Shown: one piece after another, positions 56,151 through 58,865 of the stretch | How the letters are laid out: each line of letters opens with the position of its first letter | How positions within the stretch are numbered: the first letter of the stretch is position 1 | Assembly (NCBI RefSeq): GCF_016432865.1 | Contig: NC_067398.1 | Location: 726,330,001 to 726,394,000, forward strand | DNA: 64,000 nt | Source: Antechinus flavipes | Lineage: Eukaryota | Direction: 5' to 3' | Translations under genes and position numbers: made by a program | The notes under the pieces: generated by a model | Databases searched by the model: none | What the model saw: the letters and a program-made list of their open reading frames with translations, nothing else | Told to the model about the DNA's origin: nothing

Positions 56151-56301
56151 CTGCACGACAGGGCGCCTCCTTAGGAGCCCCCGGGAGGGGCGGACTGCAG
56201 CCCCCCTTCCCCAGACCCCCGGGAGGAAGGGGCTGCAGCGCCCTCAGGCCCCGGCCGCCCCATCCCCCCGCCCAGGCTGCAGTGCTCCAGGCTCCGCCCA
56301 C

Positions 56302-56470
56302 CTGGTTCCGGTAGCCCTTGTCCACGCCCAGTGTCCGCGTGCAGAAGCGGTGGCGGGCCCCGAAGTGGCGCATCAGGTAGGCCAGGTCGATAGTCCAGAT
56401 GCTCCGGGTGAGCTGCAGCTCCTGCAGCGCCTGCTCAAACGCCGCATCGTCCTCCAGGAGCTTCAAGTAC
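56302..56470 (-). CDS. GUCD1: GUCD1 exon 3, inner copy ([13 protein letters not shown]...GVDKGYRNQ)
   Basis: 169 nt, CCCAG|G TAC...CAG|GTGGGC. Confidence 0.93.
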
Positions 56471-56766
56471 CTGGGACGGGGGGAGGGCGCGGATGAATCA
56501 TCCGCCAATCACCGAGCTTGGGAGATGGGGCGGCCGGGGGGGAACCGGCCCCGCGGGCCACCGGCCAATCACCGAACTCAGAGGGAGGGCCCGAGTGGGG
56601 CACCGGCCAATCATCGAGTTCGGGGGCGTCGCAGCAAAAAAATCAATTCCAGCGCCGGGGATGGGTGGGGGGCAGCCGTCAGCGGCCAATCCCGGCGCTC
56701 AGGGTGGGGCGTCAGCGGCCAATCCCTGCGCCCGGGGGGTCGTCACTGGCCCGGGCCCCTCCTCAC

Positions 56767-56851
56767 CTGAGCACCATCCGGGAGCAGGCCAGCCCGCAGT
56801 CCCAGTGGTACAGCTGCTGCACGATGGGTACCTTCAGTTGCACGAAGTCGC
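56767..56851 (-). CDS. GUCD1: GUCD1 exon 2, inner copy ([28 protein letters not shown])
   Basis: 85 nt, CCCAG|GC GAC...CTC AG|GTGAGG. Confidence 0.93.
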
Positions 56852-57185
56852 CTGGGACGAGAACTAGCATCGGAAGAGGTCGGGGAGGGGGAGCGCCCAC
56901 CCGGAGGGCCCTGGAGGTCCCGCCCCTCCCATTCAAAAGGGTTGGCTCCACCCTGGGATCCCGAGCCGGAGGCCCCGAGTTCAAATTCCACTCCCCGCCC
57001 TGGCCCAGTCCTGGGGCTCCTCCCGGTCTCCTTAAGAGTTCCGGGCTGGGCATCCAGGAGAGCTAGCCTCGGTCAGAGCTGGCTAGAGCCCCACAAATGG
57101 GCTTCCATGGCTGGGTCTTGGCTCCCCGGCTGCTCACTCCATACCATCCCCCTGCCCGTGCCTCAGTCTCCCCGGCTGCCCTCAC

Positions 57186-57222
57186 CGGGCTCGGCCCCGG
57201 CTCCCTCGGCCTCTTCCCTCAT
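57186..57222 (-). CDS. GUCD1: GUCD1 exon 1, inner copy ([12 protein letters not shown])
   Basis: 37 nt, GCGGC ATG...CCC G|GTGAGG; with exons 2-6 gives 717 nt = 238 aa. Confidence 0.85.
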
Positions 57223-57561
57223 GCCGCCTGCGGGCGGACGGGCCGGACTCGGGCTGTGGAGACGCCTCGGCCATGGCCCCGGCCCGATCCGCTCCTGCCC
57301 GGGCCTCGGCCCCGCTTGGGCTCCTGAGCCCCCTCTCCGGCTTCTCCGCCGCTACTGCCGCTCCCGGGAGGACGCGATATCGCACACGGCGCATGCGCGA
57401 GCGCAGGCGTAGCGCGCCGCCGCCGCCGCGTACGCACGACTCAGCGGCACGCCCAGGTCCCGCCTCTCCTCCGTTCCTCCCTCCCCTTTCTCGCGCACGC
57501 GCCTCAGGCCCCGGCCGCCCCATCCCCCCGCCCAGGCTGCAGTGCTCCAGGCTCCGCCCAC

Positions 57562-57730
57562 CTGGTTCCGGTAGCCCTTGTCCACGCCCAGTGTCCGCGT
57601 GCAGAAGCGGTGGCGGGCCCCGAAGTGGCGCATCAGGTAGGCCAGGTCGATAGTCCAGATGCTCCGGGTGAGCTGCAGCTCCTGCAGCGCCTGCTCAAAC
57701 GCCGCATCGTCCTCCAGGAGCTTCAAGTAC
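57562..57730 (-). CDS. GUCD1: GUCD1 exon 3, outer (duplicated) copy
   Basis: Identical to 56302-56470 at +1260. Confidence 0.85.
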
Positions 57731-58026
57731 CTGGGACGGGGGGAGGGCGCGGATGAATCATCCGCCAATCACCGAGCTTGGGAGATGGGGCGGCCGGGGG
57801 GGAACCGGCCCCGCGGGCCACCGGCCAATCACCGAACTCAGAGGGAGGGCCCGAGTGGGGCACCGGCCAATCATCGAGTTCGGGGGCGTCGCAGCAAAAA
57901 AATCAATTCCAGCGCCGGGGATGGGTGGGGGGCAGCCGTCAGCGGCCAATCCCGGCGCTCAGGGTGGGGCGTCAGCGGCCAATCCCTGCGCCCGGGGGGT
58001 CGTCACTGGCCCGGGCCCCTCCTCAC

Positions 58027-58111
58027 CTGAGCACCATCCGGGAGCAGGCCAGCCCGCAGTCCCAGTGGTACAGCTGCTGCACGATGGGTACCTTCAGTTG
58101 CACGAAGTCGC
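58027..58111 (-). CDS. GUCD1: GUCD1 exon 2, outer (duplicated) copy
   Basis: Identical to 56767-56851 at +1260. Confidence 0.85.
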
Positions 58112-58445
58112 CTGGGACGAGAACTAGCATCGGAAGAGGTCGGGGAGGGGGAGCGCCCACCCGGAGGGCCCTGGAGGTCCCGCCCCTCCCATTCAAAAGG
58201 GTTGGCTCCACCCTGGGATCCCGAGCCGGAGGCCCCGAGTTCAAATTCCACTCCCCGCCCTGGCCCAGTCCTGGGGCTCCTCCCGGTCTCCTTAAGAGTT
58301 CCGGGCTGGGCATCCAGGAGAGCTAGCCTCGGTCAGAGCTGGCTAGAGCCCCACAAATGGGCTTCCATGGCTGGGTCTTGGCTCCCCGGCTGCTCACTCC
58401 ATACCATCCCCCTGCCCGTGCCTCAGTCTCCCCGGCTGCCCTCAC

Positions 58446-58482
58446 CGGGCTCGGCCCCGGCTCCCTCGGCCTCTTCCCTCAT
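58446..58482 (-). CDS. GUCD1: GUCD1 exon 1, outer copy adjacent to the full promoter
   Basis: Identical to 57186-57222 at +1260. Confidence 0.82.
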
Positions 58483-58599
58483 GCCGCCTGCGGGCGGACG
58501 GGCCGGGGCTCGGGCTGTGGAGACGCCTCGGCCATGGCCCCGGCCCGATCCGCTCCTGCCCGGGCCTCGGCCCCGCTTGGGCTCCTGAGCCCCTCTCCG

Positions 58600-58865
58600 G
58601 CTTCTCCGCCGCTACTGCCGCTCCCGGGAGGACGCGATATCGCATACGGCGCATGCGCGAGCGCAGGCGTAGCGCGCCGCCGCCGCCGCGTACGCACGAC
58701 TCAGCGGCACGCCCAGGTCCCGCCTCTCCTCCGTTCCTCCCTCCCCTTTCTCGCGCACGCGCCTCAGGCCCCGCCCCTGAAATCCCGTTGTTTCTTCCTC
58801 CGTCCCCACTGGGCTGCTTTGGGGCGGAGAGCTTCCCGGAAGTATCTGCCTCTCTTCCGGGCCCG
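58600..58865. promoter_or_regulatory. GUCD1/SNRPD3 bidirectional CpG-island promoter
   Basis: NRF1 palindrome GCGCATGCGC 58649-58658, GC box GGGGCGGAG 58821-58829, ETS/GABP CCGGAAGT 58836-58843 and TTCCGG 58855-58860, between head-to-head genes. Confidence 0.8.

What the first reader, a model, noticed from the sequence alone, without database searches (positions are those of the whole stretch)
56242..58773. Microhomology-bounded 1260-bp tandem duplication of GUCD1 exons 1-3 and part of the GUCD1/SNRPD3 promoter
Seen: two head-to-tail 1260-bp copies. The 12-mer CCTCAGGCCCCG sits at all three junctions (56242, 57502, 58762). I found only three differences, all within ~140 bp of the 5'UTR/promoter: GGCCGGACTC vs GGCCGGGGCTC (~57247/58507), C5 vs C4 (~57330/58590) and C/T at 57385/58645. 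Established: junction microhomology is typical of replication-based (MMBIR/template-switch) duplications. Inference: a transcript from the outer, complete promoter that splices exon 3 (phase 0) into the inner exon 2 (phase 1) reads GCG ACT TCG TGC AAC TGA, a stop after 5 codons, giving a ~102-aa NMD target. It is normal only if inner exons 2 and 3 are both skipped. The inner copy has its own ATG exon and NRF1 site (57389-57398) but lacks the GC box and ETS sites at 58821-58860. If real, this uncouples GUCD1 from the SNRPD3 bidirectional promoter and may make a hypomorphic or two-promoter allele. A false duplication from uncollapsed haplotypes or read errors is a serious alternative.
Basis: partly seen in the sequence, partly recalled or inferred. 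Interest (0 to 1): 0.75.

Follow-up and report, generated by a model that had tools for sequence, protein, structure and literature searches.

The report
GUCD1 5' end doubled, unverified
The assembly really shows the first three exons and near promoter of the housekeeping-type gene GUCD1 twice in a row, joined at a 12-base repeat, but no read evidence could be obtained, so it is either a very young ordinary duplication or an assembly error.

Summary
Window 56242-57501 and 57502-58761 are head-to-tail 1260-bp copies. They differ in 4 alignment columns at 3 sites. The 12-mer CCTCAGGCCCCG sits at all three boundaries and nowhere else on that strand in 64 kb.

The unit holds GUCD1 exons 1-3 (minus strand) plus 279 bp upstream of the ATG. 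SNRPD3 lies head-to-head just beyond it.

The inner copy is contiguous with exons 4-6. It encodes the normal 238-aa protein, identical to the dasyurid GUCD1 in the protein database, and keeps both NRF1-type sites.

A junction-spanning ORF found no relatives.

- For real: the duplication uses one of only two direct repeats of at least 12 bp in the locus, and no gap lies nearby.
- For artefact: the scan's notes name this genome as a PacBio CLR/wtdbg 1.2.8/Pilon assembly. That pipeline usually runs its last consensus at k=13, and k-1 is 12. The scan has noted several other near-perfect exon-bearing small duplications in this genome, including STOML2 and SGSM2.

My odds are about 55% real and 40% artefact. 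Either way it is an ordinary kind of event.

The parts
56242..57501 (-). Copy A, the inner 1260-bp unit, contiguous with exon 4. It holds GUCD1 proximal promoter, exon 1, intron 1, exon 2, intron 2, exon 3 and the first 60 nt of intron 3 (48 nt plus the 12-mer).
57502..58761 (-). Copy B, the outer 1260-bp unit, next to the native bidirectional promoter. It is 99.7% identical to copy A.
56242..56253 (+). 12-mer CCTCAGGCCCCG at the left boundary, inside GUCD1 intron 3.
57502..57513 (+). 12-mer at the novel junction, where the promoter end of copy A meets the intron-3 start of copy B. This is the only place that distinguishes a duplicated allele from a single-copy one.
58762..58773 (+). 12-mer at the right boundary. 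It overlaps the Sp1-type box GGGGCGGGG (58769-58777, minus strand) of the outer promoter.
58446..58482 (-). Outer exon 1 coding part (ATG at 58482, 37 nt, ends in phase 1, donor GTGAGG).
58027..58111 (-). Outer exon 2 (85 nt).
57562..57730 (-). Outer exon 3 (169 nt, ends in phase 0, donor GTGGGC).
57186..57222 (-). Inner exon 1 coding part (ATG at 57222).
56767..56851 (-). Inner exon 2. Its acceptor is the nearest one downstream of the outer exon-3 donor (710-nt intron). Entering it from phase 0 reads GCG ACT TCG TGC AAC TGA.
56302..56470 (-). Inner exon 3, 151 nt upstream of exon 4.
56059..56150 (-). GUCD1 exon 4 (92 nt), single copy.
52229..52470 (-). GUCD1 exon 5 (242 nt).
51869..51960 (-). 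GUCD1 exon 6 coding part with the stop codon. The whole CDS is 714 nt, giving 238 aa.
57389..57398 (.). NRF1 palindrome GCGCATGCGC in the inner copy. Its twin is at 58649-58658. A second site, GCGCACGCGC, is at 57493-57502, with its twin at 58753-58762.
58822..58860 (.). GC box and two ETS-type sites (CCGGAAG and ACTTCCGG), present only upstream of the outer copy. They are shared with SNRPD3.
57245..57385 (.). The 140-bp 5'UTR segment that holds all three differences between the copies. The twin segment is 58505-58645.
59425..59550 (+). SNRPD3 ATG exon (LSM domain). The non-coding exon 1 ends at 58957.

Best explanation
I read this as a real, very young germline tandem duplication in the sequenced animal. 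Earlier notes of the scan name the animal as the yellow-footed antechinus.

The duplication arose when replication or repair switched template between two copies of a 12-base direct repeat lying 1260 bp apart. One copy is in GUCD1 intron 3 and the other is in the proximal promoter. The mechanism would be replication slippage, template switching, or unequal exchange at a short direct repeat.

Inferred consequences:
- The inner copy is a complete 5' gene end joined to exons 4-6. It carries 279 bp upstream of the ATG, including both NRF1-type sites. It can therefore still make the normal 238-aa GUCD1.
- Transcripts from the outer, native promoter should mostly splice exon 3 to the inner exon 2, hit a stop after 5 codons and be degraded. 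They would escape this only by skipping the inner exons 2-3.
- SNRPD3 is untouched.

The net effect would be a tolerated two-promoter or mildly hypomorphic allele.
For: **Shown**
- The copies are exactly head-to-tail with no inserted bases, and the junction lies at a 12-base identity.
- In the de-duplicated locus (54000-59550), only two direct repeats of at least 12 bases lie 300-3000 bp apart. The duplication uses one of them.
- There is no N run or contig end within 54 kb, so an unmerged contig overlap at a gap is unlikely.
- Each copy carries its own derived change relative to a Tasmanian devil gene model that reads through this 5'UTR (P0135). Copy B has the derived T at 58645. Copy A has the two derived 1-base length changes. 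This is what two independently evolving or independently sampled sequences would show.
- Short-read polishing with Pilon at 50x was applied to the assembly the scan's notes name. That makes plain consensus errors somewhat less likely.
- The CDS through the inner copy is intact at 714 nt. Each exon's translation read by eye against P0121 matches the 238-aa dasyurid GUCD1.

**Inferred**
- Activity of the inner promoter, splicing outcome and NMD are all inferences.
Against:
- The three differences cluster within 140 of 1260 bp (p about 0.035).
- Two of the differences are homopolymer-length changes, the typical error type of CLR consensus.
- Between-copy divergence is about 0.3%. That is about the distance between the window and contigs of same-species runs (word shares of 0.90 and 0.87, roughly 0.3-0.45%). 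The two copies could therefore be two alleles of one locus.
- Twelve bases is longer than usual germline junction microhomology. It equals k-1 of the k=13 consensus step commonly run in wtdbg 1.2.8.
- The scan has noted several other near-perfect small tandem duplications carrying exons of conserved genes in the same assembly. That is more than I would expect from biology alone.
Confidence: 0.55

Rival explanations
1. This is an assembly artefact made at the repeated 12-mer. The true locus has one unit flanked by the two 12-mers. A k-mer-based consensus or graph step went round the resulting cycle once too often. With k=13, two sites that share 12 bases form a branch. The small differences between the copies would be the animal's two alleles, or residual consensus errors, sorted onto the two copies during polishing.
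For: - The assembly that the scan's notes name was built from Canu-corrected PacBio CLR reads with 'wtdbg2 version 1.2.8' and polished with Pilon.
- Two other genome papers give the usual wtdbg 1.2.8 commands as wtdbg-cns -k 15 followed by wtdbg-cns -k 13.
- The junction identity is exactly 12, which is k-1, and does not extend by a single base on either side.
- The copies are 99.7% identical. Two of the three differences are homopolymer lengths, and all three cluster in the most GC-rich 140 bp.
- Other near-perfect small exon-bearing tandem duplications are noted in the same assembly: a perfect 798-bp array at STOML2 exon 9, a 1546-bp unit at SGSM2 exons 5-7, and entries at JOSD2 and EFNA4. 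None has been verified by reads.
Against: - The antechinus paper does not state the k used.
- From my own recollection of the program, which I did not check here, wtdbg-cns follows a backbone read by position. That should forbid a 1.26-kb loop.
- The 13-mer repeat pair at 54643/57091 did not produce a duplication.
- A loop through one k-mer path should give identical copies. Here each copy carries its own derived state relative to the devil.
- The frequency argument rests on unchecked notes.
Confidence: 0.33
2. This is a false duplication of the classical kind. Two haplotypes, or two overlapping contig ends, of a single-copy locus were laid end to end.
For: Between-copy divergence (about 0.3%) is in the range of allelic divergence suggested by same-species runs. 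The three differences would form two clean haplotypes.
Against: - No gap or contig end is nearby.
- Blind concatenation would not land on a 12-base identity (p about 4e-7).
- Haplotig duplications are usually much larger than 1.26 kb. This last point is my own knowledge, not tested here.
Confidence: 0.07
3. The duplication is real and old or fixed, with a regulatory role. The outer copy would act as a non-productive upstream transcription unit that tunes GUCD1 output.
For: Nothing direct supports this. The architecture would allow it.
Against: 99.7% identity implies a very recent origin or ongoing homogenisation. The dunnart and Tasmanian devil (and an accession I take from memory for the antechinus) are annotated with the ordinary 238-aa protein, which is identical between them. 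That gives no hint of a special arrangement.
Confidence: 0.05

Closest known systems
Intragenic partial tandem duplications at microhomology or short direct repeats (for example KMT2A partial tandem duplication, exon duplications in DMD and BRCA1; FoSTeS/MMBIR and replication-slippage models)
   Same: Head-to-tail orientation, no filler at the junction, and a junction identity already present at both ends of the unit. Duplicated internal exons shift the frame (exon 2 plus exon 3 is 254 nt, which leaves a remainder of 2 when divided by 3).
   Different: Here the unit includes exon 1 and the proximal promoter. The downstream copy is therefore a self-sufficient 5' gene end, and the allele need not be null. 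At 12 bases the junction identity is longer than the usual 1-6. The existence of the duplication in DNA is unverified.
False gene or exon gains from duplication errors in long-read assemblies (the known class of assembly false duplications)
   Same: Near-identical adjacent copies in a CLR-based assembly. Differences are at the level of heterozygosity. Several similar cases are noted in the same assembly.
   Different: No gap or contig boundary is nearby, the unit is very small, and the boundaries coincide precisely with a 12-base repeat.
GUCD1-SNRPD3 head-to-head gene pair sharing a CpG-island promoter
   Same: GUCD1 (minus) and SNRPD3 (plus) diverge from a TATA-less interval with 71-78% GC (58400-59199) that carries NRF1, Sp1 and ETS-type motifs. 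The SNRPD3 exon 1 donor at 58957 lies 475 bp from the outer GUCD1 ATG.
   Different: The assembly places a second GUCD1 5' end 1260 bp further from SNRPD3.

Membership tests
GUCD1 (Pfam PF09778, Guanylate_cyc_2) | Exon translations match the family profile above the gathering score | tested here: met
   exon by exon: exon 3 scores 64.6 bits, exon 2 31.7, exon 5 92.5 and exon 6 30.2 (cut-off 28.1). Read by eye, exon by exon, the exon translations match the 238-aa dasyurid protein P0121; CDS lengths sum to 714 nt.
Microhomology or short-repeat-mediated germline tandem duplication | Direct head-to-tail copies with no inserted sequence at the junction | tested here: met
   spacing is 1260 and 1260, and the junction is clean.
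Microhomology or short-repeat-mediated germline tandem duplication | Junction identity present at both ends of the unit and beyond chance | tested here: met
   the identity is 12 bases, p about 4e-7, and it is one of only two direct repeats of at least 12 bases in the locus.
Microhomology or short-repeat-mediated germline tandem duplication | The novel junction is present in raw reads or independent individuals | not testable with these tools
The junction ORF search was blank.
Assembly false duplication | Adjacent to a gap or contig end | tested here: not met
   the only N run in the window is 1447-1576, which is 54 kb away.
Assembly false duplication | Half read depth on each copy and no read crossing the junction | not testable with these tools
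All listed runs are kept as contigs, which carry no depth.
Assembly false duplication | Copies differ at about the level of allelic variation or consensus error | tested here: inconclusive
   Divergence between copies is 0.3%, against roughly 0.3-0.45% implied by word shares of 0.90 and 0.87. Two of the three differences are homopolymer lengths. A very young real duplication is equally compatible.
k-mer-graph loop artefact (wtdbg-cns, k=13) | Junction identity equals k-1 of the consensus step actually used for this assembly | tested here: inconclusive
   The identity is exactly 12. k=13 is the usual second-round setting in other wtdbg 1.2.8 assemblies. The antechinus paper gives no parameters.
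Bidirectional CpG-island promoter pair | Head-to-head genes less than 1 kb apart in a CpG island | tested here: met
   475 bp separate the SNRPD3 exon 1 donor (58957) from the outer GUCD1 ATG (58482). GC is 0.71-0.78 and CpG o/e is 0.7-1.4. Transcription start sites were not determined.

The most novel reading that the evidence does not exclude
The duplication is real and common or fixed in antechinus. It would create a natural two-promoter GUCD1 allele. The native promoter shared with SNRPD3 would now drive only a nonsense-mediated-decay decoy transcript that runs through, and may interfere with, a minimal NRF1-driven inner promoter. That inner promoter alone would make the protein. It also carries a 5'UTR change that extends an upstream ORF across the main ATG.
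Probability: 0.08. Interest if true: 0.4.

Novelty: new member of a known kind. Interest (0 to 1): 0.18.

Why it matters
**If real.** It is a clean natural example of a tandem duplication that includes both promoter and exons and is mediated by a short direct repeat. The expected loss of function is rescued because the copy nearest the gene body is self-sufficient. It would be a useful marker and a small case study in promoter interference and NMD, but it is not a new principle.

**If an artefact.** It matters practically. Together with the similar unverified cases noted in the same assembly (STOML2, SGSM2, JOSD2, EFNA4), it would mark a class of false exon gains. A junction identity of k-1 would be a cheap way to flag such cases genome-wide.

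Tried and rejected
**Read and contig evidence**
- I laid window:56600-57850 on runs X1, X2, X7 and X3 with read laying. I chose that stretch so that it held no long repeat.
- Only scripts on the closed machine read the whole window file, for self-comparison.

**Protein searches**
242 word candidates were found and none was significant. This says only that such ORFs are not called in that collection.
- I searched GUCD1 exon 5 inside its ORF. This gave the ordinary 238-aa dasyurid protein and no aberrant isoform. That is not informative about the duplication.
All searches were exon by exon and by reference.

**Other**
- I did not scan the metagenome, bacterial or viral collections for the junction, because they hold no marsupial DNA.
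- A 197-bp 'perfect duplication' at 41914-42342 turned out to be a higher-order unit of a minisatellite and is unrelated.
- The species identity (Antechinus flavipes) comes from earlier notes of the scan. It is consistent with my data but I did not prove it independently.
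Full report
**1. The observation**

The repeat finder and an explicit alignment confirm two head-to-tail 1260-bp copies, 56242-57501 (A) and 57502-58761 (B). 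The 12-mer CCTCAGGCCCCG sits at 56242, 57502 and 58762.

Identity does not extend one base to the left of the 12-mer and ends exactly after it on the right. The copies differ at three sites only:
- 57245-57247 (GGA) against 58505-58508 (GGGG)
- 57329 (C5) against 58590 (C4)
- 57385 C against 58645 T

A self-BLAST of the window and an offset scan show no other large near-identical tandem repeat in 64 kb. A 197-bp hit at 41914 is a higher-order minisatellite unit. The 12-mer occurs on the + strand only at the three boundaries. At local composition a 12-base junction identity has p about 4e-7.

**2. What is duplicated**

On the minus strand the unit holds GUCD1 exon 1 (ATG 58482 / 57222, 37 coding nt), exon 2 (85 nt), exon 3 (169 nt), and the first 60 nt of intron 3 (48 nt before the 12-mer, plus the 12-mer itself). 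It also holds 279 bp upstream of the ATG.

Exon by exon, the translations hit Pfam PF09778 above threshold. The plus-strand neighbour hits LSM, which makes it SNRPD3.

All splice sites are canonical. With exons 4 (56150-56059), 5 (52470-52229) and 6 (51960-51869) the CDS is 714 nt. The exon translations, read by eye and not joined, match the 238-aa protein P0121. That protein is filed under Tasmanian devil and fat-tailed dunnart names, plus the accession XP_051829367.1. I believe that accession is the antechinus RefSeq entry, but this is from memory and I did not check it.

**3. Frame consequences (read from the sequence)**

Exons 1-3 give 291 nt, which is 97 codons, and exon 3 ends in phase 0. 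Exon 2 normally starts in phase 1.

If the outer exon 3 donor (57562) uses the next acceptor downstream, that of the inner exon 2 (56851, a 710-nt intron), the reading is GCG ACT TCG TGC AAC TGA.

Skipping both inner exons (a 1411-nt intron to exon 4) restores the normal message. Transcripts that start at the inner copy are normal.

**4. The inner promoter**

The unit carries the NRF1 palindrome GCGCATGCGC (57389 / 58649) and a second site, GCGCACGCGC, that ends on the first base of the 12-mer (57493 / 58753). Intron 3 contributes GGGCGG boxes directly upstream of the inner copy (57515, 57528).

The Sp1-type GGGGCGGGG (58769), a GC box (58822) and two ETS-type sites (58836-58860) are found only in the outer copy.

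A Tasmanian devil gene model (P0135) starts its ORF inside the NRF1 site. Transcription in a relative therefore begins at or upstream of the position equivalent to 58654 / 57394. That leaves at most 107 bp of native upstream sequence in the inner copy. Whether the inner promoter fires is inference.

**5. Polarity of the three differences**

P0135 reads the 5'UTR in an alternative frame and serves as an outgroup at the protein level.
- Copy B matches the devil frame across both length-variable sites.
- Copy A matches the devil at the substitution (V, GTG).

So copy A carries two derived 1-base length changes, and copy B carries one derived transition. All three lie within 140 of 1260 bp (p about 0.035 for random placement).

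**6. Real or artefact**

The decisive test is reads across 57502, and I could not run it.
- The look-up of sequencing runs listed suitable runs. Organism A gave word shares of 0.90 and 0.87, and related organisms gave 0.65 to 0.38. All are kept as contigs.

*Arguments for a real event*
- The boundaries coincide with one of only two direct repeats of at least 12 bases in the de-duplicated locus. Blind concatenation cannot explain this.
- No gap lies within 54 kb.
- Each copy has its own derived state.

*Arguments for an artefact*
- Earlier notes of the scan name the genome as the yellow-footed antechinus. Its paper reports Canu-corrected PacBio CLR reads, 'wtdbg2 version 1.2.8' and Pilon with 100-bp reads.
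- Two other papers give the usual wtdbg 1.2.8 commands as wtdbg-cns -k 15 and then -k 13. In a k=13 graph, two sites that share exactly 12 bases form a branch, and going round the resulting cycle once too often yields exactly the observed structure.
- Two of the three differences are homopolymer lengths.
- Between-copy divergence (about 0.3%) is about the allelic distance implied by the word shares.
- The scan has noted several other near-perfect small tandem duplications carrying exons of conserved genes in the same assembly: STOML2 (perfect 798-bp array), SGSM2 (1546-bp unit), JOSD2 and EFNA4. None has been verified.

*Arguments against the artefact mechanism*
- The parameters for this assembly are not published in the text held.
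- From my recollection only, the consensus step is guided by a backbone.
- The 13-mer repeat at 54643 / 57091 caused no duplication.

I put the odds at about 0.55 real, 0.33 k-mer or consensus loop, 0.07 classical false duplication, and 0.05 old or functional.

**7. Comparison and novelty**

If real, this is an intragenic partial tandem duplication of the well-known kind, mediated by a short direct repeat. The twist is that exon 1 and the core promoter are included, so the copy next to the gene body is self-sufficient.

If not real, it is a false exon gain. Neither outcome is a new kind of thing. The k-1 observation is a testable lead for cleaning this assembly.

Noticed in passing
window 56495-56738 and 57755-57998: GUCD1 intron 2 holds five degenerate 30-33-bp repeats per copy. 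Each is centred on GGCCAATC, giving five CCAAT boxes on the + strand. This is an NF-Y-site cluster inside an intron and looks like a promoter or enhancer element.
   Followed up: no
window 59555-61100: A 52-bp GC-rich minisatellite of about 26 copies, with a 367-bp higher-order period, starts a few bases after the SNRPD3 ATG exon, inside its intron.
   Followed up: no
window 58483-58535 and 57223-57275 (minus strand): The GUCD1 5'UTR has an upstream ATG in a good context (gccATGg). In copy B the uORF ends at a TGA overlapping the main ATG (ATGA). In copy A the 1-base shorter run at 57245-57247 (23 nt upstream of the main ATG; the C5 site at 57329 lies upstream of the uATG and does not matter here) shifts the uORF frame, so it runs past the main ATG out of frame. 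If those changes are real, the only productive copy would be translated less well.
   Followed up: partly
protein P0135 (Tasmanian devil model) against window 58446-58654: A devil GUCD1 model of 267 aa starts inside the NRF1 site, reads exon 1 in another frame and splices exon 1 directly to exon 3. This suggests exon 2 skipping is seen, or at least predicted, in a relative.
   Followed up: partly
window 51990-52230: The last GUCD1 intron (between exons 5 and 6) is a G-rich and C-rich simple-repeat stretch that gives long proline/glycine ORFs on both strands.
   Followed up: no
window 41850-42420: A minisatellite of GACGGGTCACACGGAGACAC-type units has a perfect 197-bp higher-order period.
   Followed up: partly
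window 54643-54655 and 57091-57103: This is the only other direct repeat of at least 12 bases (a 13-mer, CCACAAATGGGCT) lying 300-3000 bp apart in the de-duplicated locus. It is not associated with any rearrangement.
   Followed up: yes
window 1447-1576: The only N run in the window (130 N).
   Followed up: no
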